Positions 42,417 to 62,430 of a DNA stretch of 64,000 nucleotides are shown here, one piece after another. Each line of letters begins with the position of its first letter. Position 1 is the first letter of the stretch. Under the pieces are notes generated by a model, which searched no databases, was not told the origin of the DNA, and was given only the letters and a program-made list of their open reading frames with translations. Both the position numbers and the translations under genes were made by a program. This DNA is from Botryllus schlosseri (lineage: Eukaryota). The stretch lies in assembly GCA_051294905.1 (NCBI GenBank), contig CM119381.1:16864001-16928000 (forward strand), given 5' to 3'.

Positions 42417-44032
42417 CAGGGCCGTAACAGCACTTCGTCAGGCCCCCCCCCAAAACTTTGGTCTTGGGCCCCCCATAGTGTTATGGACCGAACGTCTGGG
42501 GGGCTTCGCCCCCCAGACCCCCCTCCGGCGATACACTGGTTACCACTATTCATCATTTTCATTGGGAGTTTCTTTAGTAAATCAGCTTTAGTCGCCTAAG
42601 CGCGCGGAGCGCGCAAAATTTCTAGTATTCATGATTTCATCGGTCAGTATGATCGGGAATTGCATACATTGTTATCAATTTTTATCTTCTCTCTGCTCAC
42701 GTAATCAGATTTGCCGGTAGAGCTGAGTGAGGTGTGTTTGAAAAGGTAGGACCACTCAATAATAATTAAACATCTTCGGGCGTATACCCGTTGGCAGGAA
42801 CAAAACAGCACCTCGTCAGGCCCCCAAAAACGTGGGTCTTGGGCTCCCATAGGGTGATAAAGCGACCCCCCATCACGTTGTTCGCGTTTGTCACAAAATG
42901 ACCCATACTGTATTGAGGGCCAGCGCGAAGCGCGAAAATTTTCGATAATTTATGATAAAATCGGTCAATCAGATCGGCGACTGCATATATAATATGCTAT
43001 CAATATATTGTCCTCTCTACTCACGTAATCAGATTTGCCGGTAGAGCTGAGTGAGGTGTGTTTGAAATGGTTGGACCACTCAATAATAATTAAACATCTT
43101 CGGGCGTATACCCGTCGGCAGGAACGAAACAGCACCTCGTCAGGCCCCCAAGAACGTGGGTCTTGGGCTCCCATAGGGTGATAAAACGACCCCCCATCAC
43201 GTTGTTCACGTTTGTCACGAAATTACCCGTACTGTATTGAGAGCCAGCGCCAAGCGCGAAAATTTTCGATAATTTATGATAAAATCGGTAAATCAGATCG
43301 GTGACTGCATATATAATATGCTATCACTTTATTGTCCTCTCTACTCACGTAATTAAATTTACCGGTAGAGCTGAGTGAAGTGTCTTGAAAACGGGAGGGC
43401 CCGTAAATAATGATTAAACATCTTCGGGCGGGCGGAACCGTTTATATGACTTCGTTACATGATGTTATTTCGTGACTTCCAGTCTGCTATATCAAAAAAT
43501 ATAGAACCGCCCAAACGTAGGCTTCTAAACTAAGAGAAGCACACGATTTCAAATTGGTATTTCTTCACTGGCATAAAATTTTTCCCAGCGGGATGGTATT
43601 TGTCTTGTGAGGTTCAGATTGCAAAGACAGGAACATTCGGCGCCAGTCATTTAGGCGCCTATGGACAATTAAACCTATACGTATTTTGTATATATAGCGA
43701 AGTCTTTCGGTCAGCATAAGGGCATAGACCTTTTCGGTCAAGCTTTTCTCGCTGCCAATCGTTCTGGCACACTTCTTGGAGTCGCATGTTATATGGCCTA
43801 AAACTTGATTGTATGTCTTGGTGGGTCGCGGCGCGGTAATGGCCCAATACCCAATGAGAAAGATAAATGGCTACGTGAATTCGCGCGCAGCGCGAAAAAA
43901 TTTTGAAAAAATTGCATAAATTTTTAAAAAATACTCTATGATTTATGCTAATTCACGAAATAATTTGGGGCCCCCCATCGAGCTCGGGCCCCCCCCAATT
44001 GGGGGGTTTGGGGTGCGGCAGTTACGGTGCTG
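42417..44032. mobile_element. hAT-type non-autonomous element, 1616 bp, carrying an internal 324-bp tandem repeat
   Basis: Termini CAGGGCCGTAAC / GTTACGGTGCTG; exact TSD GCTGAGTG (42409-42416, 44033-44040). Confidence 0.88.
42590..43430. repeat. tandem repeat, 324-bp period, about 2.6 copies
   Basis: The marker (C/T)A(G/A)ATTT(G/A)CCGGTAGAGCTGAGTGA occurs at 42706, 43030 and 43354. Near-identical shadow ORFs end at 42850 and 43174. Confidence 0.9.
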
Positions 44033-44304
44033 GCTGAGTGACTACTCGGTACGAATGACGTGGAAAGTTTACATACGTATGAATAGTATGTCTTTTTCAT
44101 GCGACCGAAAAGAATATAATTCCAGTTCTTAATCTAATTTGGTATTTTTTCAACAATACCAAAATCACTTTACCAAACTTCGGGTTGATCACTTCATAGA
44201 GCTGTCATCTCCACTGAAACTTGCATAGCTTTGAACTACGTTTCGTATGCTGTAACACGACCAATCGAAGCTTACAGTCTCCATAGCTTAAATATACCCG
44301 AGAG

Positions 44305-44497
44305 CAATGTTCCCTCTTAGCTGCGCACGTGCGCAATTGCGCAGTGCTGACACGGTCTCTGCGCACAAAATATCTTAGCTGCGCACACAAAAGGCGAAGT
44401 GATGACCTTTTTTTAGTCGTTATGCAGTGTTGTCCAAGGGACAGCGCAGTGATTTGGCGAGTGCGCGCAGACTCGTGAAAAATTAGAGGGAACACTG
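44305..44497. mobile_element. hAT-type MITE, 193 bp, just downstream of the NUDT22 poly(A) signal
   Basis: TIRs CAATGTTCCCTCT / AGAGGGAACACTG; exact TSD CCCGAGAG (44297-44304, 44498-44505). Confidence 0.9.
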
Positions 44498-44546
44498 CCC
44501 GAGAGCATCGTAATTGCAACAAGAAAACAGTTACCATCAGTCATTT

Positions 44547-44552
44547 TTTATT
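44547..44552 (-). terminator. candidate polyadenylation signal AATAAA of the CARF-TASP1-NUDT22 transcript
   Basis: TTTATT on the + strand, 33 nt downstream of the stop codon at 44585-44587. Confidence 0.6.
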
Positions 44553-44584
44553 GAAAGAAGATGTAAATTTGAAATAACAGCTAT

Positions 44585-47500
44585 TCACTGATAACTCTTC
44601 AAAATTCCGTAAAGAGTACAAGCAGCCTTGCCGTTGGGACACATCTTACTCCATAAATCTGGATGCGTAGACTTCATATCCGTAACATCCTAAACAAAAA
44701 CGCATCACATAGAAATCCCCCAAAAGATTCAGCCACATTCGAATTGTATTGGCGAGCGCGATCATGGGCTGGAAAATGTCGCCTTGCAAAGGACACTACC
44801 AACTGGCAGAGGGGTCATGGTCAAAGTAGCCAGCGTTGCTACTCAGGTGGAAATCACGCCGTGAATTTATATCGAATTGCAAGTAGAAGTAGTGAATTAG
44901 AAGACATGTAAAAACTACTTCAAGCAAAAGCAGAAAATGAAGAACAGAAAAGTACTCAAAAAGTAGCTCTGCTCGATGGGTCGCTGATAAAAACGATACA
45001 AATCTTGCCCAAACCTACATTCTACTTAACAAAATCCAAAGTTTTAAAAGCAGCTATCCCCTAAAACACTGTTAAGTAGAAGTAGTCTAAAAACAGAATA
45101 GGAACAAAATAGGTGGCGAGATAGCGTCGTGGCATAATCCACAGCTGCAACACCAATGGGTTGCGGGTTCGAGCCCGATCGAGGTCGATTCCAGAATTCC
45201 TACCTAAGTGTTGAAGGTTTATCTAGGCTCCTCCTCGCCATCTCATCCGTGTGAGTGGTGTCTTATAAAAGCCTAGAAGTGGGCCGTGCTACAAATCTGC
45301 AGCTACGGCATAAAAATGAAGAGAATTGACCTGGTATAAATGACCATAGTAGTCGACAAGCCCCATGAATACCACAAACAGCAACAAAGGAACAAAATAG
45401 GACGTTATACATTTTTCCTCGATGTTTTCGCGGCACATATGACTCATGATATTCAATACACACGATCTGTGCATATGCATAGTGCGAATGCAGGATATGC
45501 ATCGCTGGACAAGAAGGTGCAGATATAGCCTCCCGGAAATGCCGAGTGCCAAACGGGGAAGCCACAGATACCAGTTTTACTGAGCAGGTCTTTGGTTTAA
45601 CCTAGTCGGGGGTTACGCCCACAACCTACAGATCAAGAAGCCGGACGCTCCACTATTACGCAATCGTGTCGGTGGATAACCAAAATCAAAATAACCACTT
45701 TGGTGAGTAGTAAAAGACCTGACTACCTCTGCCAACTGGAATGCTTTAGAGATACTCAAGATGACTATTACGGAGCGGAGCAACATACTTGTTCTGGAAT
45801 AAAATGAAGATTTGTCGATTCATCGGTTTCGGCGCCGCCTTTCCTATAAGATTGGAGGACCTCTGTACTTGTCAAATGGCACCTGTAGGCAAAAAAGACC
45901 GTGACATGGTTCTCGCAATTACGGCATATTGATGTTCACATAAAACTAGGGTTGTATTGACTCGACTCGAGTGGAGATTTTTTTGGTGAATCGACCCGAA
46001 TCATTTTCCTAAATACGAAAAAGAAGAAGAAGAAAAAGAATAGCAAACCTTCCCCATCATTGGTATTTCGCCTATCGATACTTGAAATAGGACGAGAAAC
46101 TACCAATAGTGAGCAAATTCAATATCATCCGAGAAGAGTTGTAAAAAAGTAGGTGGAACACGACTTAAGCTCAAAACTGAACTGTGAACACAACGAGTCT
46201 TGGTATTATGACTCGGACTCGACCCTCTGCACTGTGACTAGGATTTGACTCAATGGTGAATTGAAAATGACTCGACTCGCGTGAAAACTATACCAGTGAC
46301 TTGTATATGAGTACCTTACAACTTGGTTACAACCTGGCATAGAACTATATAGATTAGGTAACCGTCACAATGTGGTACTCACCTCATCAGAAAGTACGCC
46401 ACCGCTCTGCCGGCACTCAAATTATTTCTGACCAGTCCCATCAGCATCGGTTCGCCAATTTTTTCAATGGACACATTTACCTGAGTTAAGAAAATTCGGT
46501 CGGGCGCTTGAAACATTCGTTAATAGCAGAGGTGGTCAGCAACGAAGTACTTCTACTTTTTCGGAGTACTCAAGTAGGTTTTGTCGACTTACAATACTTA
46601 CTCACATGCTACTGTTTTTAGTCTACTTCCACTTAGACTTATCATTTTTTTACGCAAAACCACTTTATTTTTACTCTCTGCTTGCATCAATTTCACAAAC
46701 AAAATTGTAACAACTTGTCGAAACAGCGCCTGCATCACAGTAACTCAACATATTTTCTAAAATCGCGACTATTTCCAGTGTCGTTTTGCGTGCACCTTGT
46801 ATTGCATTTTCAAAGTAAGCCGCCTCCGATTAGCCGTTAAAAGTAAGTGACCCATCGACCAAATTTGTGTCTTGAAACTATTTGTACATTGAAGAAATAA
46901 ATTTTATACTGCCACTTGATAGTTTGACATGCCTTGGAAATTCTTCCTTCTGCTTTGAGATGTTTTGGAAATTTCTACTACTACTACTACAACTACTAAT
47001 TGAGTAGAAATCTACAGCGTTAGTTCTGCTTCTACTTGAGTATACCAACGTTGACTACTTTTCACCACGTCTGGTTAAAGGCCACAACCAACCTCATCAC
47101 GAATCTCCTTCACTTGCGAGTGGAAAATTTCGTGCAACGCGCCGTCACAGTCGAGTTCGTCAAAAGAAACGAAGTCGTGAATCTCCAATCCGGCCGCGGC
47201 CTGCGCAAGTTGCAAAAAAATATTCGCATATGCGTAGGAGTATTGCTACCTTAACCACTAACCGATGGTTCCGGGTGCCCGCCTGGAACGTCGAGCTGCC
47301 CGGCGCTTTCCGCAAGCCACGAATTTCTCCACTGGAAAATGGCTTTGCCGTCGTCTGTGATAACGATGCCGGCAACACCCAAAGGTTCGGCAAGGTACGC
47401 CTGCAAGTATGTGCAGTGTGCACATTGGTCAGAGGTGATCAGCAACGAATTAGTTCTACCTTTTCAGAGTACCCAAGTAAGGTTTGCCTAATTGCGCGAC

Positions 47501-48959
47501 TTACTCATACAGTCATGTTTTCACGCTATTTCTACTAGATGAGTTTTTATACTGCTCAACTTTTTACAATTTGAATTTCTAAGTGAAACTGTCACAAATG
47601 TTCACATTGGATAGGATTGTAGCGTTAGTATACCAAAGTCGCAGCCATATCATTGATGACTAAGTAAGCATGTGCCCCTACTAAAACTAAAAAATAGCCC
47701 TACTTAGAAACCCGTCGGCTGCTGCAACCATTGAACTTTGGTTAATATGCAGCGTAGGGTTCAACGATTCAATTGGAGCAGTATCATTATCAAGCTATTT
47801 TGCGAGTAGAATAGCTGCTGGCACACAAAACCACCTGCGTCTGATTATAATCCTTGGCTCCCTTGGCCATCAATTCCTCAACTTCGTCAGCCCAATTCGT
47901 CTCCATATAGTCCCTGTAAAACGTGTAAAAGTACCCTAAATCAGATTTCTACGATCAAATCGGATACGCTCGGTAATGTATAAATTCCAATATCCCGGAA
48001 AACTGTCAAGTAGAAGTAGTATAAACCATAAACGCTTGAGTAGTGCAAACAAGCAGGCAAAACCTACTCGATTATTCTGAAAATGTAGAAGTACTTCGTC
48101 ACTCACAACCTCTGCATACCTGTAACAGGTGAGTCCGACGTTGAACGTTAGCTGTGCATTACCATCGTCGGAAGTGTATCGAACCGAGTGGATACGGAAT
48201 TTCTGCGCGTTGAACAGACGCGAGTTCCGTTGTTTTCTTATTTCCCAACGCTCGGCTATGCATTTCTCAAATTCAGGATCCACCTGCCGTAAAATCGAGC
48301 GTCACAAGTCAGTTAATGTCTAGCCCGGCCTTGTAATTACTAATCCTATGCAAATAAAAGTCAAAGGATATCAACGTAAATGTACGAACATCACAGTAGT
48401 CAAAGTTGCCACTAAAGTAGAAGTAAAAGTTAACACCTTGCTTCTACTCAATTACAAGTAAAAGTAGCTTTTTCCAAGCCATGCAAGCTACTTGAAGTGA
48501 AAGTGGAAAATGAACATCTGAAAAGTAGATTTCGTCGAAAAGTCATACTTTTAGCGGGTGGTCCAGTCTGAAATTGCAGGGTGCATCCTTGCGACTAACA
48601 AATCAGCCACTTACCGTCATACAGTGGGTATTTCACTCAGTCGTTATGACAATTTCACGCATAATCGTGAGGGAAAAATATCGCATATTGCTTGCTTATC
48701 AAGTCGTAACATAGATGTGTAAGTAGCCAAAACACATAACCACTTGATGAAGAAGTGCATGTAGGCAAAACCTACTTTACCATTCCGAAAATGTATCCGC
48801 ACTTCCATACTGACTACCTCTTATATTCACATAGCAAACTGTTACCTTCCGATTAAATTCGTCGGACATGGCTACTTTGCACATTGAGAGCGGCAGACCT
48901 GACTTCAATGGAGACGCGAACATGATAGAAATCTCGGGATCAAGAGCGTTACCCTCTGA
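44585..48959 (-). CDS. NUDT22: NUDT22-like Nudix hydrolase module (8 exons)
   Basis: LDPEISIMF..GLP, RLFNAQKFRIHS, GLTCYRDYMETNW, AYLAEPLGVAGIVITDDG, GQLDVPGGHPEP, HEIFHSQVKEIRDEVN, AGRAVAYF, ETDESTNL, LWSKMCPNGKAACTLY. These collinear motifs match NUDT22 as I recall it. Confidence 0.92.
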
Positions 48960-51900
48960 CTGCAAACAAGACGAATCCGCGTCCACAAAAATAAATGATA
49001 TTTTATGGCCAGTAAGACGTACAGAACTGCCAGGATTATCAGAGCCATCAAGCATCGCTATTCCATTGATGCCGCTAACTTGTTCAGCAGGAGACAAGCT
49101 TGATAGAACCTCATCACTTTTGGCATCTTGGGATGGATGAACTGATGGTTCTTCCGAAGAAGAGACCTGGGTAAATAAGTAAAATGTCGATACAACGGAA
49201 TTGTACCAAAGCAAATCCCAATCACACCTTTGTCCAGGACCCGCCTACGGTCACCGATTTACCCGGGACTGCGTTACTGGGTAGTCGTGATAAAATGACC
49301 TGTAACAAGAAAAGTACGATATCGCGTCTGCTTCGCGGAAAATTTCTCCAGCGGATACGATTTTCACACATTATCATTTGATAGCAAGGTGCCATGCGAA
49401 CTGGCATCTCATGTTACAACAAAGACTGGGCAAAGAGACTCTTGGAGGTGCAGAGCTTCAATACACAATTGAATAACATATACATATTGAAACAAACCCG
49501 AATATTTTCGGCTGACGGTCATAAGGTATAATCGTCAATAACTAGTAGAGATTTCAAAGGAACTTAACAGTCGTATCACCAAATATGACGTCACAGGCAC
49601 TAAGTATTCAAATAATTGAGGCGAACAGATTGCTTAGGCTCAGTTTACTAAGACTACGAGCATTGATTGCAACTATTATTGTCAAATGAGGAGAGATGTT
49701 TCTTTGAGTGCTGAAATTATAGTTTCAATAATTTTTTCCAACCATGGAACCTTGCTAAGTTGTAACATAGCATCCAAAATATGTAGCACATAGCTACGCC
49801 TGTCTTTGGGTACGATGACCTCACAGCATTGTCTGAAAACTCTATGAAATTGGTATGGTCCAAAAAACACCAAATTACGTACACAGTCTAATACTCGATT
49901 CGGAATGGAATCACTCAAGAACACAATTGTAGCCAACCCCAGTTACAACGTACCAAACCAACGCAAGAATATATCATCACGCTTTGTTACCTGTGGGCTC
50001 TTGTCCGTTGTGGACATGTGACTGATGACCATGCTTGATGTAGTGTGGCCCCACACCACTTCGACTGGAAAATGAAAGAAAAAGGCTTCATCGCACAGCA
50101 GAGATTGAATTGAATGGCGGACGATTTGGAGGGGCTGTGGGCGAAAACATACAAAGAGGGCGATTTGGGAGGGTGTTGAAAAATTTATAATCAGTGGAAG
50201 TTGATAGTTGTCTCATATCTCAGCGATGCCTAATCATCGTTGAACAAGTTTGTTGCCTTCAAAAATATTTTGATAAGGGTGAGTGAGTCTGAGTGGAAAC
50301 TTGAGATTAAAACAGAGACCTGTCAGTGAACGATTTTCTGTGGTATGCAATCGGTCTGAGAAATCGAAATTAGGACCTTTGTCGTGGTTTTGGCAAAACT
50401 GACAAAGTATGAAAGTACGGTATGGAAAAAGATTGCCATACTATGTCATACTATGCTCTGGAACTTATAAGTAGAAACACCATTGGCACAGCCTGCATTC
50501 ATACTTGACACCATGTGATATTGGATGAATTACACATCTGAATTCACACCCTACTGACTCACCAACATTTCGAGGACCATCAACGCAGTGATGCAGACAC
50601 AACAGGCCGGCTTGTTTCTCACACTCTGCGTTCAACATCGGCGAGCCTAACATACAATGGAACTGACTTGTTGTTCACACTGAGCGTAGATTTTTGCAAT
50701 ATTACCGAGAAAATCTTTAACGAGAGCGTCTTGAAGAGCTTGATACGGCTGGTCGTGGTTACGAAGACGTTCCGCACAGTTTTTACTCAGCATCGTGCTT
50801 ACTAGTTGTTCCCCGCAACCTGGAATAGGACGTAAATTCGTTCATGTGTGGCAAATCGAAAACCCAAGTGCCACAGAAAAACAGCCATTCCGCCAATACT
50901 ACAAAAACTAACCTACACACTTGCAAGCTAGCGTAGGCCCGTTGATCACATTCTCATTCTGAAGATCACCAAGTTATCTCGGAAGAAACCAGGAGTAAGG
51001 TCTCCATTCGGTAAATGTTGGCACTGTTAAATCTAGTTGATGCTGCAGCAGTGTTTCCGAACCTTTTTAGCTTCGGAAACCGGTAAATATTAAAAACAAA
51101 TTTTGCGGGCCGGTGAACCTTCAAAAATCGAAATAATCCGCAATGTAAATACGACAAATACATGCAACACAAAAGATGACATTGGAAACTTCATTTTAAT
51201 GAAAATTCGCTGTTGCCTCTTTGACGCTATTGAAGTTTCTCCAAGGTCCTTTCAAAAACTTCATTTCGATTTTTCGTTTTTTTATTATAAATAACAATGA
51301 CTATTCTGCTTGGCAGATTCCATGATACCCCAAAATGTCGCTAAAATGTACTTTTAAAATAAAACGAATATTGTTTGAAACTCTTTTTAGGTTCCACAAA
51401 TAACTGGTCTTGAATGAGTTGCATGCTACTTTCGAACATCTTGGTGCAATACCTGCAGCATTGTGACGTCCGCCAAGTCCATAGTAGACCATGAATTCTG
51501 CATTACGATTTGCATGCAATTGATGCATAAAATTGTAATATATTCAGGCAGACCTGCAGGAAAGTTGACACGCTACACATACACTGCCCGTTGAGAACCT
51601 CGATCTACTGTATTGAGCTGATAAATATATCCTATTCGTTTGATTTACGGTGCGTGATATGTGAATATTTTATAATGACCGTATCACAGGGACAAGTCAT
51701 AAATAGCATTAAAACCCACCACTCGCAGTTACAGCTACTGAAGGAGAATCTCCTCTTCCCGGCTCGGCCCAACATCCACATCCATAAACAGCAGCCTGCG
51801 CATGTACAGTACATAGTTGCATCTATTGAATACGAGTAACCCGCAATTCACTTTAAAATCCTACCTGACCGACTCTACCAGGCATCTTCAAGACGATCCC

Positions 51901-54900
51901 TCCGCTCGAAACAGCAGAAGCGACGTTCCCGTTCAAATCCAACGCGACAGCGCCAACTGTGTCCAGTCTGATGATAACAACTTCGATTAAACGCGGATTC
52001 AAACAAGCCGAGTATCTCAACTACCTTTCGCGGTCCTGGCAAGCTTCCTGGTGTCGGCGATTACGCGCCAATTTCTCCAGCAGTCTCTGATGATATTTCT
52101 GCCACGACTTGAGAGCAGACTCTACACAAAATTAAATCCGAATTAGGGATTGCAACGAGTTATCTCGCAAACCAGTTCAGAACTTACCACTCACCAAATC
52201 GCCCGATTCGCACATTTTAACGCCGTGCGCTTTGGCCCAGTTTTCCGCCCCGGAGGATACCATGAAGCTGACGAATACTACAAAGTTTATCCACACGTTT
52301 CATCAGTACCAGCCATATTTAGTTTCTACCTTGGCGGAATACGTCCCAATTCTAGTCGACTTCTCCTTCTTTGTTCGGATAGAACTTTGTACGCGGCACG
52401 AACAGGATTTTTGACTTTGCTTACGCAAGCAACGGAACCGAAGTAGCTATCACATCGGTTTGCAGGATCTGAATTACAATCGGAGTAGACTGGTCGTCGA
52501 GTGGTAAAGCCAGTAAAGCTATATTTGATATGCACTACAATCTAGCGGAACTGAATTCAATAAACTCGGCCATAACCAACTGTAATACAAGTCAAAAGAA
52601 AATGACATCATGCTATCTGATTTTCAATGACCGATTGTATTCTGAATGAATTTTTCAATTCGTCAATTTCACAAACTTCCACCTTTATTACTGAGCTGCA
52701 TTCTCAATATTAAAAACGTAAGTCTTGCCGCAACAGCCCACCTTTTGATTAGCACTGAAGAGCAAGCTTAATATTTTCAACATTTATCATTAGTTAGATG
52801 ATAATAGTTAGATAGTTATGATAACCCGTAACACAATTTTAATTTAATCACCACAAAACCGTGACAATCCCAGACATACGTGTCCCGGTGTAGTCATTTC
52901 GCATACCTGAGGATGGCGAAGTATCCATCACACTTGCGTCGCATTCCACCTGACCCGACTCGGTGAGATTCGAACCGTACCCGGCATTTGTCAGTTCGCT
53001 ATCCTGCACAAGAACAATCACAATTTGCACAGGAACATATTCCAAAGTCAAATCATGTGTCAAGTAACGCAAATTTTTAAAGTGACTCGAGTCGAGTCAA
53101 GTTATCTCTAACTTTTTGATTTCGAGTCAACTCCAAGTTATCAAATCATTTTAGTTTGTTTTGTTTGGTTTCAATGTACGGATGGATACACATATTTGCA
53201 TATAGGCTATAGTCAAACTTGGTGCCACACCACTTTTAAAATTCAATTCTTACGAATGAATATATTCGCATGGTCGCAATGATATCATAATGCAGGCCTG
53301 GCAGTTAAATGCATGTCTGTTTTGTCTGCGATTTCGCTCCTGATTGAAGTAACGATATTAAAAACTTTAACGGAAATGGAATCCAGTAAAAGGGTTAGCA
53401 TTGATCATGCGGCTTTGCGAAGGAGAGTATTTGACGACTTGAAAATGGAGTCATAAATTATTACATATTTTCCATACGTCGAGTCCACGTCAAGTTAAGT
53501 CGTTTTAGTAAGTCAAATAATATCGAAAACGTGACTAGAGTCAACTTGAAATGGCAGCAATCATACTTCTAACATCTGTACAGCAAGAGCGGTCGCCTCC
53601 CCTGCCGAGACACCCTCCCTGATTTTGCGACTAACAGCAGTGCAGACCGTTTTACAAAGCTGGCTATAGCCCGGGTATCTTTCGTCAGAATGGTAGCCAG
53701 CGCCTGCAATGGTTTCAGTATAAAAATCTGCGCAAAGACGTTGAACCGAAAGGTACCTACCAACATGAATAGCTATGAATCCAACATCAATCTTTTGACA
53801 TCTTAACGCAAATAAGTATATTAACTTCACATCTGACTAATTAAAAGTAAGTATTCTAAGCCTTGTTATTGCCTTCAAAACTGAATACTGTCAAGTAGAA
53901 GTTGTAGTCTAAAATTAAAACCACTTGAGCGTACTGAGCAAGTAGCCAAAACCTGGTGCAGTATTCAAAAAGGTAGAAGTACTTGGTTACTGACCACCTC
54001 TGAAGCAGACATACCTTAGCGCGGCGAGATCGCAGTACGGTTGGGAGTTGACTTGTACGATATTCGTAACGCTAGGAGGAGACACATCTTTCACCGGCAC
54101 TTCTTCTGATGACGAAGGTTTAGGTAGGGCCGTCGCTTTACCAGAGGCGAGAAATATGTGGTTGTGAATAGTCTGGCAAATAAATTTCAAGTGTTGGACC
54201 GTTGACGAATGGGTCGTAACGATTCGTTCATTCGTTAGGGTTGGGTATAGCAATTCAAGTACTCGAATCTGCATAGAGTATTAATTTTGACGATTGGGGT
54301 ACCAAAAAATTATAGGTTCCTTATTATTTTATGAATGAAAATTGTCATTGCGATACTTTCTTGTGGCAGCGGCAGCCTTGAAACCACAATAAGAGGAAGT
54401 ATATCATTCAATGCATGCAGCAACAGGCTACAGCATTTCTGTATAGTAATGACAGACCTGTGGCGTTGTCTTATATATAGCAATGACACTGTCAGCAAAT
54501 TTGAAATGATTTACATAGAATGATTTACATAGATTATTTACTTTATTGTCGCATAAAAAAATGTATTTGGAGCAGGGTTGTAATGAGGCCCGATTTTTTG
54601 GTGACTCGAATTGACTCGAGTCATTTTTTCAAATCCCTAACATGACTCGACTCGAGTCAATTTGTGTATTGACTCGACTTGTACTCGGGTCATTGCGCAT
54701 GACTCGAACCAAGTCATTTCACTCGAGACATTTCATGGTAACTTCGAAGAACAGTAATTTAACGGTATATATTTTGGGTAATTATGAATAACACATTGAA
54801 AAAATCAGTATCGTAAGATCTACAGGATATGAAACATAGGTATTGGAAACGACGTTTGGGTCTTATATAGATTGAAGTCCATGCGGCATATCGAAGCGTT

Positions 54901-57900
54901 ACACAGGAAATGATAACCTGACAAAGCATGTAATATGTGTATGGTGTGAAATATCGAGAAGAATTGACATTCAATTCAGAATCGAATCAATCAGGTATTC
55001 GAAATTGCCCAATCCTAATTTCTACAAAATGTACCTTTGTGGTGGGAAAGAATCTCTTATTGTCGAGTTTTGGTTTTTCGTTGTCGTCCGCATGAGCGAA
55101 TAATGTATTCAAGACGTAATCGCTGATCATTGATTTCAAGCTTGGAATGTCGTATATTCCTTTGAAAAAACATCTCAATTGTCGGTCTGAAATCGGTGCT
55201 ATTTGCTGAAACGAGAAGACGTTACCGTTCCGGACGAGTTCTCGAACTTTGTTAATGACCCGTTTGTCGAGCTGCGTTGTGTTGGTCCGAGATACTATTT
55301 CGTGATTGGTATGAGAAGCAACAAGCGGAAATCGAAAATAGTGTACATCTGGAGAATAACAATGATGGATAAGCATTTAAGCAACCTAAACAAAGATGAA
55401 CTAAGTTATATTCAGCAATTTAGGAATAGTAGTGATTAGATCAGGGCTTCTTCAACTGGAGCCCATGGACTGAGTCCGCGGACTCTATGTAAAGGGTCCA
55501 TGAAGGGTCGATGTTGAAAATACAACTGCACACTATAAAATTACGTTATCCTAATTTATAAGATATGTCCCTATTTTTGACATGTCCACATAGGCGCTGA
55601 ACTCCGATTTTCCCTAGGTATGCGGTATCGATGACGTCACAAAGGGCTGACGTCATAGTGCGTCAGAATTGACAAATGAGCCGACTCGCAAGCGTTCAAT
55701 ATCACCTGTCACTTGTATATGGTGACAAAATTACGATAGTATTAAGCAGGCGCGCAGCCGGCCGGCCGCTTGCTGAATTGATTTCAAATTTACCAAGGTA
55801 GAATCAGTTTATTATGGTCAAGTGCATGCACCAATGATGATAATAGATCGATCGGATCAGCATCCTAGCGTAACGGCCTCACACGTAGCCTAATACTCGA
55901 CACTACTACGACACATCACGCTACGATAGGATTACTAGCGAACACTCCGACTACGCAGTCAATTAGCGAGCTCGCAATCTCCCGCAACATATTCGCCAAC
56001 ACGCGCGCCGACAATCAGGAAATTTCAATTACTCGGCTCGAGAACAAACGAATACGCATCTGTGGCGACGGCTAATAATCTAAAGTTACAAGAACTATTC
56101 TCACAAATGTGCGTGCTGGACTCTATATTCATTAGTCACTCTGATTGCAGGGGAGTCAGAAGTTTCGATATCAAGAGCCTGCAAGACAATTTTCTGATGT
56201 TCTGTTTTAGTATTAGCGTTAATCAAAATCAATTACGCCGCTGTCTGTTCACGATCAGTATGTATTTTAATCAATTCTGTCCATGTTCAATGTCTGAGCC
56301 AGTCCGACATCACAATCTCGGAAAACGCGGCAGTTCCGGCCGGTGCATCATATCATATTCCGACACAGCAAGTATTAGTGGAAATCAAGTACGCATGTAC
56401 GTGTACGGTGTACGCACGCGTCGCAAATGCTTGCGGACATTCGATGCCATTCAGTTTCGCGATGTCAATCTTTAATCACAATCGAGAGCCAAAGCATTCT
56501 AGGCACGAGACGCGATCGTTAGTCTAATGATGCTATATTTCGTAACAGGCCTATTGCACACACAATTGTGTAGGTAGACCAACGATGGTATCGTGTGCAG
56601 GCCAGCGATGGTATAGTGCGTACTGGGCCTATTCCCGATGCGATTCTTCAAGCCAGCGGAACGAGGCTTGATGGAGGCGCGATAAATCAGGCCAGCGACG
56701 ATCGCAGAGCGCGCGGCAATCAATGACTTCGGAATCATCTCAGCGCGAGATCGCGTTGCGTTACATCGTGCACAAACTATTCTCGCTAATTGGAAACACG
56801 CTTCTCGTTAATTGGCCGTGGCCGCGCACGACACTGATAAAATAAGACTTACGGAATTGCAACTGAATATTAACGTCAGAATGGTCATTTCAAAAGGACG
56901 GGGTTGTGCTACGCGCATGAATGTATTGCTTCTGATTTGATTAAGTGTTCAGCAGCAGTACGAAATACATTGCTTAATTCTAAATCGATCAATTCACCAG
57001 CCAGCCTAGCCGAATTCTGGGTATGCCGCATACCTAAAAAAATTCCTAGGTATGCGCGGCATACCTAGCATACCTGAGTTCAGCGCCTATGCATGTCCAT
57101 GTTATATTTTATTTACTGCGCTCACCACAGCTCAAATCGCCACTAGGACAACACGGTCACTAGTAATTTCACTGCGACTGATGAGACGGCTTGGCCGAAG
57201 TGATGACCTATTTTAATTATATATCCATCATGCAGTTGTTTAGTCATCAACTAGACCAGATGGTAATGAGCCCATGATCAGGAGTATTTGACTGTCCGCA
57301 ATATTGATCCCCGTCAACTACAGTCGTGGTTGTGCAATTCAAAAAAATTTCTCGGAATCTGATAAACTCATCGCCAGGCTTCAAGTGATTCGACTTGACT
57401 CGAGGCATTTTCTCCTAATACTGAAATGACTCGACTCGAGTCAATCTGTGTATTGCCTCGACTTGGACTCGAGTCGTTGCTCATGACTCGAACCAAGTCA
57501 TATGACATGAGACTCAGACGGTCAAGACCGACATTTCATTGTAATTTCGAAGAATAGTGAAGTAACCACACTGCTGGATTTTCCTCTATTGGTACTGGTA
57601 GGAAAATTAGCATATTGTAAATGCGAACCATTCAATATCACCAAATCGAGTTATAAAAAGTGGATTTAACAAGACTTCAACTGGAAACTGAGCAGTCAAC
57701 ACAATGACAGAACTCGGGTTATAATACCATGACTCGGACTCGATCCTCTGCTCGGCAACTTGGACTCGGACTTGAATCGGTGGTTCATTGAAAATGACTC
57801 GACTCGAGTCAAAACTTAAATAGTCAGATTGGCTTGTGACTCGGGGCCTGGAGACTTGGTTAAAACCCTTGTCATCGCATGCAACTCTAAACAAGATCAC

Positions 57901-59649
57901 ATTCACTTTGGTTTCACAAATTAGAATATTCATTCATTTAAACAAGTCTCCTTAGCTCTAGAAAGTTAGCAAATATATGGGGTCAAGGAATGCATAAAAC
58001 ACCTGACCCTGCACATCGAAGAATGCAGAAGAGAAGTCACTAAGCAGTTACCAATCACTGACAAAGTACTTTTACTTCTTTGGAGTATTCAAATGGGCTT
58101 AGGCCTACTTCCACTTCAATTGGACAGTTTTTAGCTGTTGATGCAAATACTAGGACTAGAATACATGCTTGCTATTTCTGGTTATCCTTATGTCAATGGT
58201 ACAGTAAATGGTCATCAAACTGTAAGTATCTACATTTTTAATAACTATAACTTGAAAGATCACAATGAAAGGAATAAACAGACACCTTCATATTTAACCG
58301 GTTTATCCGCATGCAGAGCTTCCAGAAGTCTATCCTTTGCATCATCCTTTGCTCCTTGTGTAACATCAGCAGGATCGACCATTGGCAAACCGAACTCGTT
58401 ATAAACTCTAGCCGTGCGAAACTGTAAATTACAAAACATAATACCGTATTCAAAATTTAGAAAGATACCGATTCTGATATATCATATCAACCTGTATGGA
58501 TGCATTGCAACTTGTTTGATTCAACTGTCTTTTCCTAGAATTCTGTGCATTGCAAGTTTGAATGAGTATTTCACAATGAGACAAGCGTACCTCAATGCAT
58601 GCAACATACTTTGTTAGCTGGTGAGGCCTCGTTACAGACCCACTTCTCTGACTTGATGACTTCGAAGGCGTGACCGAAGTATTGGATCGGGACATTTCCA
58701 TTCAGTTGCTGGAAGTAAATCGCTGTCAAAGAGACATATTTGAGTGCGAAACGGCATACAGTTTATCTGTACTGGTTGCAGTTTTTGAATGTGTGAGATG
58801 GAAACTATGAATCGATGACATGTTTTCAACTAACAGGGCATGTAAGAGGAAATTATAGGCACACGCAACTCGCACAGCCACAGGCATAGTACGAGCATGA
58901 AATATTAGAAAAAGTGGTAGAAAATTAACCGAAGGTAAAATTTTTGTAATAATGAAGAGGTGTCATGGACTTGTAAAGACGAAGTGAGTTCAGATGTCTT
59001 TACAATGAACAAGTCAAAAATTGGTGGCACTGCGTCGGGTTCACTGGTTGGACATAAGGAAAATTTGGTGTGCAGCGTTTTTTTCGGCAACCCAACAATT
59101 TGGTCAGTGAATCCCATGAATCCGGAAAAACAAGTTATTTTTGAACAACCCTACTGTGTACATCTACATGAGTACCAACCATGACCCCTGTATATTGAAG
59201 GGCTTACATCGTAGCCCTAGGCTACTGGAATCGCGGTACGTTTTGCCTGATATATCAGGTGAGCAGCGACGATTTTCCAAGTTGAAGTAATTTAATAAAA
59301 AATAATAAAAAACTAAAACATAGCGTGAGCACAGGACACCGATTCCATACAGGCATTGTAGTAATGCCCAAGTTCATTAATGATAGTCTAACAATGTTTA
59401 CAAAACAATGAAAGGCAAGCTCCAGTCACAAAATGTCGTACTTGATCTAGAGGAGCCATCCCGCTTGAAACGTTTCGATTGGCCTTTGGCATGTGACGCC
59501 GCGCAGAAAAAACTGCCACCGGTGACAGCGAGGAAGCCTTCGATCAATGTTTTTGTGCATCCGGAGAACTTTCCATAGCCGTAGCATTCGTTGGCGTCTT
59601 TATCGAAATCGATCAAATTTTTCTTCAGAAATCTTTCTGCATCATCCAT
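44585..59649 (-). CDS. predicted CaRF-like / Taspase-1 / NUDT22 triple-fusion protein, 28 exons, 1023 aa
   Basis: Exons 59442-59649, 58610-58722, 58492-58542, 58286-58421, 55226-55348, 55035-55159, 54015-54172, 53761-53801, 53567-53703, 52907-53003, 52330-52468, 52188-52267, 52025-52121, 51865-51967, 51720-51795, 50706-50819, 50563-50646, 49991-50064, 49228-49299, 49023-49166, 48846-48959, 48120-48283, 47835-47913, 47263-47400, 47093-47200, 46383-46480, 45789-45882 and 44585-44689 all join through GT-AG introns in matching phase, giving 3072 nt with no internal stop. The true N-terminus may lie further upstream. Confidence 0.72.
45113..45400 (+). mobile_element. candidate tRNA-derived SINE in the last NUDT22 intron
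   Basis: Pol III A-box-like TAGCGTCGTGG (45122-45132) and B-box GGTTCGAGCCC (45166-45176) at tRNA-like spacing, but no full cloverleaf. The 3' boundary is uncertain. Confidence 0.45.
46528..47071. mobile_element. CAGAGGTGG-family MITE, near full length
   Basis: Termini CAGAGGTGGTCAG / TTCACCACGTCTG; near-TSD GTTAATAG / GTTAAAGG. Confidence 0.6.
49222..53801 (-). CDS. TASP1: Taspase-1 (threonine aspartase 1, Ntn-hydrolase) module (12 exons)
   Basis: GFIAIHVGAGYHS, DSELTNAGYGSNLTESGQVECDASVMD, FGSVACVSKVKNPV, GRIPPSFMVSSGAENWA, autocleavage site RLD/[42 protein letters not shown] (catalytic Thr codon 51958-51960), SGCGEQLV, VVWGHTTSSM, ILSRLP..PGKSVTVGG. The unspliced frame stops at 49222-49224. 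Confidence 0.95.
54015..59649 (-). CDS. CARF: CaRF-like (calcium-responsive transcription factor) DNA-binding domain module (7 exons)
   Basis: YFGHAFEVIKSEKWVC, LNQTSCNASIQFRTARVYNEF, YFRFPLVASHTNH, LDKRVINKVRELVRNG, RFFPTTKTIHNHI are collinear with CaRF motifs recalled from memory (KATCPARIYIK, YVQLPTQQAHQYH, LHPQVAHKIQELVSQG, FFPTVNDIKNHI). This needs confirmation by profile search. Confidence 0.75.
55589..57091. mobile_element. hAT-type non-autonomous element, 1503 bp, in CARF-module intron 4
   Basis: Perfect 16-bp TIR CATAGGCGCTGAACTC / GAGTTCAGCGCCTATG; exact TSD CATGTCCA (55581-55588, 57092-57099); CCTAGGTATGC subterminal repeats. Confidence 0.92.
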
Positions 59650-59673
59650 TGCAGTTAAATATTTACGCTACAG

Positions 59674-60858
59674 CAGGGGTCGCCAACTCAAAATGGGTCG
59701 CGGGCCACTTTTCCGAATGCCGAGATGCCGCGGGCCGCAGGACATCAATATCGATATAAAAGTAGGCAAAGCAGTTCAGCAACCACATCTGATAACTCTT
59801 CGTTATTACAATGCTGTGCTCTCTAACATGGGCGACGGTTATAGTCACCACAAAAGAAATAATATTTTATTGAACAAACACAAATACAACAAAAGTATCA
59901 TGATCATCAATTTCCAATTTCGTTATATTTTGAACTATGAGCTGTACACGATACCTGATACTCTGTAGCCGCTAAAACAGGGGTGGCCCACATTTTTGCT
60001 CTTCATGGCCGCTTTTCGATTACTCATGTAGCCTGCGGCCGCATACCGGTTGTTATAGTCGTGATAAACTAGCTGGGGCCAAATGCCCACGTTAAACTGT
60101 CCATGTCCATTGCCGGTACACTCCGAACTAATCAATTTATGCACATCGGCTTACTATGCGGACCGAAATTGTTATTAGTTATGTTGTAATAGCCACAGGA
60201 CACCCCGGTCTGTAGTCGCGCCAAGCGCGAAAAATTTTTCATGTTTATTAGTGAATTTCGTCAATATTCGTATGGTTTCACATATTACTATAAAATATTT
60301 ATCCTTTCTCGGCCAATGTGATCAGATTCACCGATAGAGCTGATGCAGGGGGTATCTTAGAAAACGTAGGGTTGTTATCAAAAGTGTCGACAGCCGCATA
60401 ATTTCCCTTCTACTACCGCAGATTGGCCACCCCTGGATTAAAGAATCAATATTTGGATTAGCTAGACACGGTAGGCCTACTTGCTAAACAACTATCTCCT
60501 CGTAAAGCATGGTCTTTTGGAGAGCCCGAAGTCGTTTTTCACGCGTCTCGGTCTTGGCAGTGGTGGGCCATTGCACGTCAAGGCGATATTATGGCCATTC
60601 GTACCAGCAAATTCTTCATCCATGGAATGATATTACCATGTCGAAGCCGTATCAACTAGTAAGGAATAGTGATATTGGGCACAGTGTAATGGCTTACTTC
60701 GAACAACAACAACATTATGTTTCAATTGAAATAATTTTCAGCGTTTAAAAATGATTTACTAAGCGTTTTTCTGAAATTTGTTCAAATCAGGTCGCGGGCC
60801 GCAAAATAGGACCTCGCGGGCCGCATGCGGCCCGCGGGCCGCGTGTTGGAGACCCCTG
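59674..60858. mobile_element. hAT (Charlie/Buster-like) non-autonomous element, 1185 bp, inserted 16 nt upstream of the CARF-module ATG
   Basis: TIRs CAGGGGTCGCCAAC / GTTGGAGACCCCTG; exact TSD CGCTACAG (59666-59673, 60859-60866); GCGGGCCGC subterminal repeats. Confidence 0.92.
59978..60435. mobile_element. nested MITE with CAGGGGTGGCC termini
   Basis: CAGGGGTGGCC / GGCCACCCCTG inverted termini, no intact TSD. The internal part resembles the 324-bp repeat unit at 42590-43430. Confidence 0.6.
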
Positions 60859-62430
60859 CGCTACAGGATGCTAGAAGAAGCAGAGTAAATTCGACTATGC
60901 TTTAATTTTGATGTATAGTGCAGATACTACACTAATTACGATAACTTACTGCTTCAACAAACTTGATCATATATGATTTGGATAGCAATGTTTTTCGACA
61001 ATTTTTTTCACAACAGGTATCATCTATGTTAGAAAATTCGAGTCCTCTTTTGCAGTACTTATTGCATTGTGTTCATATTGACTATTCACAGTTATCATGT
61101 TCAATGTACAGCAGCTTTATCTCACGATTACTGTAACTGTCTATTATGCTTTTCCCCTCATTACTAATACTTGATATGGCAATTCTTTCATGAACTGCAT
61201 TTCGCATACTGGATCCAATCTATCTTTCGTGATTTGTAAAATTTTATTTTTGCATTATTTGCAATAAATCAATTCTCTTGACATGGTTCATTCCATCGCT
61301 AACGATATCGCAGACAGCTATAGGAGATGCCTTTCACTGCCGTCTACCGTTCATAATGGCCTTGACTGGCATTATAATACCACTACAGCTCGGCATTTAG
61401 TAGTATTGCTTTAGTAGTAACTAGTAAGGCTTCGTATACAGTTGAATATATGCGAATGAATTATGAATATGTGATCCCATGGTTGCCGGAGAACCCGACT
61501 TGGCCTATAATACGTGACATTGCAATTGCCGAAGTCCTATGTTATGTTTATGATTGATTGACTTTTTCAAGTCGTTTCGACTCCTTTCTATCCTTACATT
61601 GTACCAGGATCTTACGTCGGTAAGCATTAGCACGCAAAGTATTGCAGGCAGACAAGCTCATCACAATCGACCAACGCTGCCGAAATAATGTAAACACAAA
61701 ACCGGTTTTCAGAAGAAAACAAAGGTGCGAGCGCCATCTGTTAGATCACTGTGATTCGCCTGTTTGTCGCATCATAGTGTCCTATATGGTGTCGACACAA
61801 GCAAATCGCACGGTTCAATGAAATTGTATCACGTCACAGTTTCCATTTGCCTACAGGCAATTTGACGGTGATTTTTGACCGGCTTGCCGAGCATTAAATT
61901 TGATGAATCGGGTATCAATCGAAAGCGGACTCTGCACTGATTACGAAAATATAAATTTTATTCCGCTCGCGGCCCTGGAACCCCCACAATCAGCCCCCAA
62001 TTATTGATTGTCGAGTAGATTGGCAGTGTGACGCAACAATGCTGTCTGGCGAAACGAGAGACTAGCTCAAGAGCAAGGATGCGGCCGAGCGGCGAGAGTG
62101 GGATCAGCTGACGTCGCGGCAATAGTGATGTGCAAACGCGCCACAGAGAAACGCTGCGCTGTTGATACTTTTTCTATGCGTTTCGGTACAAGCGAGCACA
62201 CACCAGCCTTTCCTTGACTTGTAAGGGTAGAACTGGGTCCACGGAATGTATTAGGGCCCTACCAATTTTCGCGCAATATCCTTCAGCTGATAAAGATATG
62301 TAGGCTACATCTAAGTAGTCTGCCTTGGATATGTCAGATTATTATGATATCGATTGCCTTAGCCCGCTTGTTGCGTAGGGCTCCAGAGACACGTCGCGCT
62401 GTTGATGGTGGGTGTCGATACTTTCTATAG

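What the first reader, a model, noticed from the sequence alone, without database searches (positions are those of the whole stretch)
44585..59649. CaRF-like / Taspase-1 / NUDT22 triple fusion: a candidate self-processing polyprotein
Seen: 28 exons join through GT-AG introns in matching phase into one 1023-aa frame: CaRF-like domain (about aa 1-265), linker, Taspase-1 (about 309-676), linker, NUDT22 (about 727-1023). The only stop sits in a removable intron, and an AATAAA follows the last exon. Established: in vertebrates CARF, TASP1 and NUDT22 are separate genes. Taspase-1 self-cleaves at D/T into alpha and beta subunits and cleaves MLL and TFIIA. Inference: autocleavage at D504/T505 would give an alpha subunit carrying a DNA-binding domain and a beta subunit carrying a Nudix hydrolase (NUDT22 is a UDP-sugar diphosphatase in human). 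I know of no description of this architecture, but could not search for one.
Basis: partly seen in the sequence, partly recalled or inferred. Interest (0 to 1): 0.95.

Follow-up and report, generated by a model that had tools for sequence, protein, structure and literature searches.

The report
Tunicate CARF–Taspase–NUDT22 fusion gene
One expressed tunicate gene joins a transcription-factor DNA-binding domain, the protease Taspase-1 and the sugar-nucleotide hydrolase NUDT22 into a single 1023-residue protein. The fusion is shared by at least five ascidians, is apparently undescribed, and may cut itself into working parts.

Summary
On the minus strand, 28 exons (59649 to 44585) join through 27 GT-AG introns into one 3072-nt frame of 1023 aa. 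D504/T505 lies in the Taspase motif LDTVGAV, the stop is TGA at 44587-44585, and AATAAA follows 33 nt later.

RNA contigs from public runs of the same organism show 20 of the 27 introns as spliced joints and a 21st by a matching loose end. Both module junctions are among them (54015|53801 and 49228|49166). One 2345-nt contig runs from the CARF part through all of Taspase into NUDT22.

The Taspase part has no start codon of its own: there is no in-frame Met between residues 221 and 362. The same three-part protein is in RefSeq as "uncharacterized protein" for Styela clava, Ciona intestinalis and Clavelina lepadiformis. A Phallusia record and plankton metatranscriptome contigs carry Taspase+NUDT22.

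No paper in the library describes the architecture. Self-processing is not shown. It is supported by intact catalytic motifs and by a [Q/M/P][L/M/V]D|G motif kept in the otherwise unalignable linker before NUDT22 in all five ascidians.

Verdict: a real, conserved gene fusion and a new variant of known enzymes. The polyprotein reading is plausible and testable.

The parts
44585..59649 (-). Whole coding region: 28 exons, 1023 codons plus stop
   Evidence: Model rebuilt. Introns come from RNA joints and from orthologue colinearity.
54056..59637 (-). CARF/ALS2CR8-like DNA-binding module, aa 5-291 (exons 1-7: 59649-59442, 58722-58610, 58542-58492, 58421-58286, 55348-55226, 55159-55035, 54172-54015)
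   Evidence: Pfam PF15299 on the window ORF 54990-55376 gives E 1e-5. The module is 49% identical over 298 aa to the Styela orthologue, whose PF15299 hit is 67-70 bits. All six introns are seen as RNA joints.
53802..54014 (-). Intron 7 (213 nt), the CARF-linker to Taspase junction 54015|53801
   Evidence: Spliced joint in contigs of X1 and X2. It is GT..AG, and the frame continues across it.
49234..53794 (-). Taspase-1 module, aa 308-674 (exons 8-19)
   Evidence: Pfam PF01112 on single exons gives E 3e-11 and 2e-6. The module is 66% identical to Styela. The Styela orthologue matches human Taspase1 2a8i at E 1.8e-89 over chain residues 38-413 of 420.
51958..51963 (-). Codons D504-T505, the predicted autoproteolysis site in LDTVGAV
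   Evidence: The site is invariant in all aligned tunicate proteins.
49167..49227 (-). Intron 19 (61 nt), the Taspase to NUDT22-linker junction. It starts GTGTGA, so retention would end the protein at ...WTKV
   Evidence: Spliced joint in X1 and X2 contigs. Sequence; the ORF piece ends WTKV-stop.
49044..49055 (-). Codons M714-L715-D716-G717, the Taspase-site-like motif in linker 2 (putative cut D716|G717)
   Evidence: A [QMP][LMV]DG motif sits at the same place in five ascidians. The equivalent linker is disordered in the AF2 model.
44600..48944 (-). NUDT22 module, aa 730-1019 (exons 21-28: 48959-48846, 48283-48120, 47913-47835, 47400-47263, 47200-47093, 46480-46383, 45882-45789, 44689-44585)
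   Evidence: Exon 24 matches human NUDT22 5lf9 residues 116-160 at E 6.5e-9. The module is 63% identical to Styela. Styela matches 5lf9 at E 4e-60 over residues 2-286 of 304.
44585..44587 (-). Stop codon TGA
44547..44552 (-). AATAAA poly(A) signal, 33 nt after the stop

Best explanation
This is one gene and one mRNA that encode a 1023-aa proprotein. Its three parts are an N-terminal CARF/ALS2CR8-type DNA-binding domain, a complete Taspase-1 (type-2 asparaginase, N-terminal-nucleophile hydrolase) and a complete NUDT22 Nudix hydrolase.

Shown here:
- The spliced in-frame transcript.
- The absence of a start codon for Taspase.
- Conservation of the fusion across ascidian orders.

Inferred from established Taspase biochemistry: the proprotein cuts itself between D504 and T505. 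This would give an alpha chain that carries the DNA-binding domain and a beta chain that carries NUDT22. The two chains would stay together as the active protease, so protease and hydrolase would be delivered together, probably to chromatin or the nucleus.

A second cut at L715-D716|G717 in the disordered linker would free a 307-aa NUDT22. I rate that cut at about 40% (see rivals).
For: - RNA: both module junctions are spliced in contigs of two samples. One 2345-nt contig runs from exon 4 to exon 25.
- Frame: there are no stops across 28 exons and all introns are GT-AG.
- Start codons: in-frame Met occurs only at residues 1, 138, 221 and 362 upstream of and within the early Taspase part, so Taspase alone cannot be started.
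- Orthologues: colinear three-module proteins are Styela 1059 aa, Ciona 1002-1005 aa and Clavelina 1011-1040 aa. Phallusia (769 aa) carries Taspase+NUDT22.
- Catalytic motifs: LDTVGAV, GAGYHS, NAGxGSNL, GRVGQAA, GGHPEP and EIRDEV are all kept.
- Selection: differences between the RNA contigs and the window are 22 synonymous to 12 non-synonymous.
- Structure: the AF2 model of the orthologue shows folded Taspase and NUDT22 parts and a partly modelled CARF part, with both linkers below pLDDT 50.
Against: - No single long read shows the whole mRNA. Contigs are k-mer assemblies, and the tool itself warns that a contig across genes is not proof of one transcript.
- The raw-read runs gave almost no coverage.
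- Exons 26-28 rest on homology only.
- No protein-level data exist for either cleavage or either activity.
- RefSeq predicts N-truncated isoforms in Ciona and Clavelina that lack most of the CARF domain, so the full three-part form may not be the only or main product.
Confidence: 0.8

Rival explanations
1. Full polyprotein reading, an extension of the best explanation rather than a contradiction of it. After D504|T505 activation, the Taspase cuts its own linker at L715-D716|G717 and releases a free 307-aa NUDT22, about the size of the 303-aa human enzyme. The DNA-binding domain stays on the protease.
For: - A [Q/M/P][L/M/V]-D-G-[S/N/A] motif lies 34-44 residues before the FNRK anchor in all five ascidians, inside a linker that otherwise cannot be aligned. 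It is the only or nearly the only [FILVM]DG in each roughly 1000-aa protein. Shuffled linkers carry it 2-12% of the time each.
- Ciona QMD|G, Phallusia QLD|G and Clavelina QVD|GANDD fit the published Q-x-D|G and Q[ILV]D|GxDD Taspase1 sites (PMC3102056).
- The motif lies in a stretch with pLDDT below 50, directly before the folded NUDT22 domain.
- Acidic residues follow at P3'-P5'.
Against: - In human Taspase1 the P3 Gln is essential (PMC3102056). The window has Met and Styela has Pro there.
- The plankton Taspase-NUDT22 relative has no such motif.
- The five sequences are related by descent, so the shuffle figures are not independent.
- No proteomic evidence exists.
Confidence: 0.4
2. The main product lacks the DNA-binding domain. 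An internal promoter or alternative first exon gives a Taspase-NUDT22 protein, starting near M221 in the window, and the CARF-bearing form is a minor isoform.
For: RefSeq isoforms X3 of Ciona (791 aa) and Clavelina (839 aa) start inside the CARF domain, and the Ciona start aligns with window M221. The Phallusia record starts in linker 1. The plankton relatives start exactly at the Taspase domain with an upstream in-frame stop.
Against: In the window's organism, contigs join exons 1-6 to exon 7 and onward at similar depth: X10 45 vs 18, X2 6 vs 19.5. No contig beginning inside the CARF part was listed. The CARF part is conserved at 37-49% identity over about 270-300 aa among ascidians.
Confidence: 0.2
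3. Three neighbouring genes, either an operon resolved by spliced-leader trans-splicing or ordinary neighbours. The fused RNA would be rare read-through and the working proteins would be made separately.
For: Tunicates have operons and spliced-leader trans-splicing, and other first-reader notes suspect operons in this genome (untested). Intron 19 hides a stop that would end a CARF-Taspase protein. M714 could in principle start NUDT22.
Against: - Taspase has no usable start codon.
- Both junctions are ordinary cis-spliced GT-AG introns in phase.
- No loose ends were listed at 53801 or 49166, although 17 loose ends were not shown.
- The open fused frame is kept in five ascidian species of three orders.
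- M714 is not conserved.
Confidence: 0.04
4. Assembly or annotation artefact: a mis-join of unrelated loci.
For: None found.
Against: Independent RNA contigs from several samples and studies follow the same exon chain. Four other species' genomes or transcriptomes give the same order. There are no N runs in the window.
Confidence: 0.01

Closest known systems
Human Taspase1 (TASP1, threonine aspartase 1; PDB 2a8i)
   Same: Asparaginase_2 fold. The proenzyme has a D|T autoprocessing site in LDTVGAV. Homology covers human residues 38-413 of 420 (orthologue E 1.8e-89).
   Different: The human enzyme is a stand-alone 420-aa protein. Here it has no start codon of its own, carries about 300 aa of CARF-type DNA-binding domain on the alpha side and about 350 aa (linker + NUDT22) on the beta side, and lacks its own stop.
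Human NUDT22 (UDP-glucose/galactose pyrophosphatase; PDB 5lf9)
   Same: Full-length homology from residue 2 to 286 of 304 (orthologue E 4e-60). GGHPEP and the acidic EI-x-DEV stretch are kept.
   Different: Human NUDT22 is a separate 303-aa protein. Here it is the C-terminal module behind a 50-90-aa disordered linker that carries a Taspase-site-like motif.
Vertebrate CARF / ALS2CR8 (calcium-response factor), Pfam PF15299
   Same: The N-terminal module matches almost the whole PF15299 profile (5-229 of 235 in Styela). Atlas look-alikes are 'calcium-responsive transcription factor-like' clusters.
   Different: Only the DNA-binding-type domain is present. By my recollection of the roughly 725-aa vertebrate protein, its C-terminal part has no counterpart here, and Taspase takes that position. 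DNA binding is untested.
Taspase1 substrates MLL1/KMT2A and TFIIA (cleavage site Q[ILV]D|GxDD, PMC3102056)
   Same: The linker motif shares P2 hydrophobic, P1 Asp, P1' Gly and downstream acidic residues. Three of five ascidians also have P3 Gln.
   Different: The candidate substrate is the enzyme's own polypeptide. The window and Styela lack the P3 Gln that is essential for the human enzyme.
Self-cleaving cellular precursors such as Nup98-Nup96 (from general knowledge)
   Same: One translation product is split by a built-in proteolytic activity into separately functioning proteins.
   Different: Different fold and chemistry. Here the cleavage is only inferred.

Membership tests
Taspase-1 (threonine aspartase, type-2 asparaginase family) | Asparaginase_2 domain (PF01112) | tested here: met
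   Window exons score 43.4 and 27.4 bits against a cutoff of 27. Orthologues give E 1e-50 to 1e-53.
Taspase-1 (threonine aspartase, type-2 asparaginase family) | Closer to Taspase1 than to asparaginase or glycosylasparaginase | tested here: met
   Tested through the Styela orthologue, which is 66% identical to the window. Human Taspase1 scores E 1.8e-89 against a best asparaginase of 8e-24.
Taspase-1 (threonine aspartase, type-2 asparaginase family) | Autoprocessing site Asp|Thr with the Thr nucleophile in LDTVGAV | tested here: met
   D504/T505 is present and invariant in the tunicate alignment.
Taspase-1 (threonine aspartase, type-2 asparaginase family) | Endopeptidase activity after Asp in Q-x-D|G substrates | not testable with these tools
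   Needs an enzyme assay.
NUDT22 | Full-length similarity to NUDT22, covering both its N-terminal domain and its Nudix-like domain | tested here: met
   The orthologue matches 5lf9 residues 2-286 of 304 at E 4e-60. Window exon 24 matches 5lf9 116-160 at E 6.5e-9. The window is 63% identical to the orthologue over 291 aa.
NUDT22 | Metal-binding acidic residues of the Nudix-like helix | tested here: inconclusive
   EIRDEV (aa 921-926) is conserved among tunicates. The single-exon search against PDB gave no alignment, so equivalence to the human residues rests on my memory of the human sequence.
NUDT22 | UDP-sugar hydrolase activity | not testable with these tools
   Needs an enzyme assay.
CARF / ALS2CR8 (PF15299) | PF15299 domain above the gathering score | tested here: inconclusive
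   The window's unspliced ORF scores 26 bits against a cutoff of 28.9. The spliced protein could not be handed to the tool. Orthologues score 40.6-81.6 bits, and the window is 49% identical to Styela over 298 aa.
CARF / ALS2CR8 (PF15299) | Sequence-specific DNA binding and transcription activation | not testable with these tools
   The only lead is feature-level likeness to MULE/FAR1/ZSWIM3_N-type DNA-binding domains.
Tunicate operon (polycistron resolved by SL trans-splicing) | Downstream cistrons have their own start codon at or after a trans-splice acceptor, and the upstream cistron has its own stop and poly(A) site | tested here: not met
   There is no Met for Taspase. Both junctions are cis-spliced in frame. 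No stop remains in the spliced RNA.

The most novel reading that the evidence does not exclude
Taspase works here as a polyprotein protease. After self-activation it cuts a conserved Q/M-L/M/V-D|G site in its own linker to release NUDT22, while a transposase-type DNA-binding domain holds the protease on chromatin. As a 'Rosetta stone' fusion kept since the common ancestor of the three ascidian orders sampled, it would point to an unrecognised functional link between Taspase1, CARF and NUDT22. That link may also exist in vertebrates, where the three genes are separate.
Probability: 0.35. Interest if true: 0.8.

Novelty: new variant of a known kind. Interest (0 to 1): 0.66.

Why it matters
Taspase1 is an unusual protease with very few accepted substrates, which include MLL and TFIIA. 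NUDT22 and CARF are both poorly understood.

A fusion of all three, conserved across the three ascidian orders sampled, is a strong natural hint that they act together or in sequence. A Taspase-type site in the linker offers a ready-made, genetically tractable substrate in Ciona or Styela embryos.

The case also shows how gene fusion can arise: the Taspase stop codon lies inside a 61-nt intron. Finally, it flags database entries now labelled 'uncharacterized' that could be named.

Tried and rejected
- **Ab initio exon chaining.** My own dynamic-programming chaining produced spurious micro-exons and missed real ones. I dropped it in favour of RNA joints and orthologue tblastn.
- **Raw-read runs.** X13 and X17 laid only 20 and 5 reads, mostly on repeats. 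They say nothing about transcript ends.
- **tRNA and Rfam scans.** Scans of 43000-61000 found nothing, so the very deep short RNA pieces in introns are dispersed repeats, not known RNA genes.
- **Single-exon PDB search.** The search with exon 25 gave no hit.
- **Spliced protein as query.** The spliced 1023-aa protein has no reference, so it could not be handed to Pfam, PDB, structure or database tools. The Styela orthologue (P0001) was used as a proxy, and the window protein was compared only inside scripts.
- **Literature searches.** Searches for taspase+NUDT22, taspase+gene fusion+Ciona, taspase+tunicate, taspase+ascidian, LOC100178578 and NUDT22+Ciona returned nothing relevant.
- **Taspase site in linker 1.** I looked for a Taspase-type site between CARF and Taspase. 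None is present in any species.
Full report
**What is in the sequence.** The region is eukaryotic, about 41% G+C, with many introns of 57-70 nt. Stop-to-stop pieces on the minus strand already show three kinds of protein fragment:
- Taspase (NAGYGSNL, ECDASVMD, LDTVGAV).
- NUDT22 (PLGVAG...DVPGGHPEP).
- A CARF-like protein.

Pfam on single ORF pieces gives PF15299 ALS2CR8 (E 1e-5), PF01112 Asparaginase_2 (E 3e-11 and 2e-6) and a weak NUDIX hit.

**Transcript evidence.** Public runs of the same organism were found and laid on 48500-54499 and 54000-59999.
- Assembled RNA contigs show 20 spliced joints, all CT..AC on the plus strand, which is GT..AG on the minus strand.
The joint 53801|54015 appears in X1 and X2, and so does 49164-6|49226-8.
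- One X2 contig of 2345 nt (depth 19.5) runs from exon 4 (58382) through exons 5-7, all twelve Taspase exons and the NUDT22 linker, then 468 nt beyond 48844.
- A second X2 contig and an X10 contig of 758 nt cover exons 1-6.
- A loose end at 48844 matches 48281 onward, which gives intron 21.
- The raw-read runs had too little coverage to say anything about transcript ends.
- These are k-mer contigs, so they prove each junction but not one full-length molecule.

**Gene model.** I combined these joints with tblastn of orthologues and direct reading of the 3' part. The result is 28 exons, 27 GT-AG introns, 3072 nt and 1023 aa, with these features:
- D504/T505.
- Stop at 44587-44585.
- AATAAA at 44552-44547.

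Two details are worth recording:
- The large CARF ORF at 55376-54990 is split by a 66-nt intron (55160-55225).
- A 51-nt exon 3 (58542-58492) encodes a basic patch, NSRKRQ.

In-frame Met residues lie at 1, 138, 221, 362 and beyond. The Taspase domain begins at about residue 308, so it cannot be translated on its own. Intron 19 begins GTGTGA, so only its removal keeps the frame open.

Differences between the RNA contigs and the window are 22 synonymous to 12 non-synonymous. They are almost all synonymous within the Taspase core, as expected for a frame under selection.

**Relatives.** A full HMMER scan with one CARF exon found a 1059-aa protein. It is Styela clava XP_039248440.2, 'uncharacterized protein LOC120326249', carrying PF15299 and PF01112. 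It is colinear with every window exon, including all NUDT22 exons. Further searches added the rest:

| Source | Protein | Length | Modules |
|---|---|---|---|
| Styela clava | LOC120326249 | 1059 aa | CARF + Taspase + NUDT22 |
| Ciona intestinalis | LOC100178578 | 1002-1005 aa | CARF + Taspase + NUDT22 |
| Clavelina lepadiformis | LOC143447380 | 1011-1040 aa | CARF + Taspase + NUDT22 |
| Phallusia mammillata | A0A6F9DHK7 | 769 aa | Taspase + NUDT22, starting in linker 1 |
| Marine metatranscriptome | P0015, P0055 | 701 and 697 aa | Taspase + NUDT22 |

- In the metatranscriptome contigs the Taspase domain follows the first Met directly, and P0015 has an in-frame stop 6 nt upstream.
- In trees of both the Taspase and the NUDT22 parts, these plankton sequences fall inside a well-supported clade with the ascidian fusions (98/100 and 100/100). 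The window pairs with Styela.
- The window therefore comes from another ascidian, probably a stolidobranch.
- The Taspase-NUDT22 join is shared by all tunicates sampled. The CARF domain is present in all three ascidian orders.
- Among 30 long Taspase-bearing proteins from other organisms, none has an ALS2CR8 or NUDT22 part.
- Fish NUDT22 and human Taspase1 and NUDT22 are stand-alone proteins.
- RefSeq also predicts N-truncated isoforms in Ciona (791 aa) and Clavelina (839 aa). They start inside the CARF domain but keep Taspase+NUDT22. No predicted isoform separates Taspase from NUDT22.

**Identity of the modules.** The Styela orthologue matches human Taspase1 (2a8i) at E 1.8e-89 over residues 38-413 of 420. 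It matches human NUDT22 (5lf9) at E 4e-60 over residues 2-286 of 304. Both enzymes are therefore complete. The window is 66%, 63% and 49% identical to Styela in the Taspase, NUDT22 and CARF parts. The catalytic or structural motifs of both enzymes are invariant among the tunicates. Atlas look-alikes of the N-terminal part are CARF-like clusters. At lower scores they include MULE/FAR1/ZSWIM3_N DNA-binding domains (a lead only).

**How it probably works.**
- Shown: one spliced frame, conserved.
- Inferred from Taspase biochemistry: the proprotein cuts itself at D504|T505. The alpha chain (1-504) then carries the DNA-binding domain and the beta chain (505-1023) carries NUDT22.
- A further step is suggested by the linker before NUDT22, which differs in length (about 30-60 aa) and cannot be aligned between species. 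Every ascidian nevertheless has one hydrophobic-Asp-Gly motif 34-44 residues before the FNRK anchor:

| Species | Motif |
|---|---|
| Window | MLD\|GSDN |
| Styela | PLD\|GNMDD |
| Ciona | QMD\|GNSD |
| Phallusia | QLD\|GNYE |
| Clavelina | QVD\|GANDD |

- The published Taspase1 site is Q-x-D|G, refined to Q[ILV]D|GxDD (PMC3102056).
- In the AF2 model of the Styela protein, both linkers (277-317 and 698-749) have pLDDT below 50. The motif sits at the end of the second linker, just before the folded NUDT22 domain.
- Cutting there would free a 307-aa NUDT22, close to the human size.
- Against this step: human Taspase1 needs Gln at P3, which the window and Styela lack, and the plankton relative has no such motif. 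I put this step at about 40%.
- No Taspase-type site lies between the CARF part and Taspase, so the DNA-binding domain should stay on the protease.

**Rivals.** An operon or read-through origin is unlikely for four reasons:
- Taspase has no start codon.
- The junctions are cis-spliced in phase.
- The fused frame is kept in five species.
- No predicted isoform splits the modules.

A more serious qualification is that forms lacking the CARF domain may be common, given the RefSeq isoforms, the Phallusia record and the plankton relatives. An assembly artefact is excluded by independent RNA and by the four other species.

**Novelty.** The proteins are in public databases but unnamed. The paper library holds no text that combines Taspase with NUDT22, ascidians, or Ciona plus gene fusion, and none that combines NUDT22 with Ciona. 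The one paper holding both 'taspase' and 'tunicate' is an unrelated review, and neither locus name appears anywhere. This is a new domain architecture for three known families, not a new kind of system. Its value lies in the functional link it implies and in the testable self-substrate.

Noticed in passing
window 54601-54729 and 57385-57513; 57400-57800; 46231-46289 and 57758-57816; also about 49484-49516, 53978-54002, 59200-59400, 59668-59713: Dispersed repeats sit inside introns and just upstream of the gene. Copies are 81-84% alike. Their summed RNA-contig depth runs to thousands, far above the gene's 4-45. There is no tRNA or Rfam match. They are probably an abundant MITE/SINE-like family present in many transcripts.
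   Followed up: partly
window 48050-48113, 48758-48821 (direct) and 46526-46590 (inverted): A 64-nt repeat lies within 7-46 nt of exon ends, just downstream of exons 22 and 21 and just upstream of exon 26 of the NUDT22 part. Its meaning is unknown.
   Followed up: no
window 55160-55225: Intron 5 is 66 nt, stop-free and in frame, so retention would insert 22 aa into the CARF domain. One X1 contig (55131-55262, depth 4.6) crosses it unspliced. This is either a retained-intron form or pre-mRNA/DNA in that library.
   Followed up: partly
window 56438-56972 (inside the 2937-nt intron 4): An X10 contig of 489 nt at depth 89.5 lies here with a non-canonical 42-nt skip (56709>56752) and a 4-nt deletion. 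A 102-codon open piece lies at 56807-56502 on the minus strand. It may be a transposon copy or a separate transcript.
   Followed up: no
window 42647-43320: ORF pieces about 325 nt apart repeat nearly the same peptide (...REQRDGGS.YHPMGAQDPR.WGPDEVLF...), which looks like a tandem or segmentally repeated element downstream of the gene.
   Followed up: no
window about 54080-54056 (aa 284-291, PPSVTNIV) in linker 1: A short P-[SV]-V-x-x-[IV] motif is kept in the otherwise variable CARF-Taspase linker of all five ascidians. It may be a docking motif.
   Followed up: no
P0013 (Plakobranchus ocellatus GFO11974.1, 616 aa): A mollusc Taspase gene model carries an N-terminal ZSWIM3_N/FAR1-type DNA-binding domain (36 bits, cutoff 27.8) ahead of the Asparaginase_2 domain. 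This is either a second, independent fusion of a transposase-type DNA-binding domain to Taspase or a merged gene model.
   Followed up: partly
P0050 (Ciona X3, 791 aa), P0046 (Clavelina X3, 839 aa); window M221 at about 55130: RefSeq predicts isoforms that start inside the CARF domain. The Ciona start aligns with window M221 (MISDYVLNTLF), which hints at an internal promoter.
   Followed up: partly
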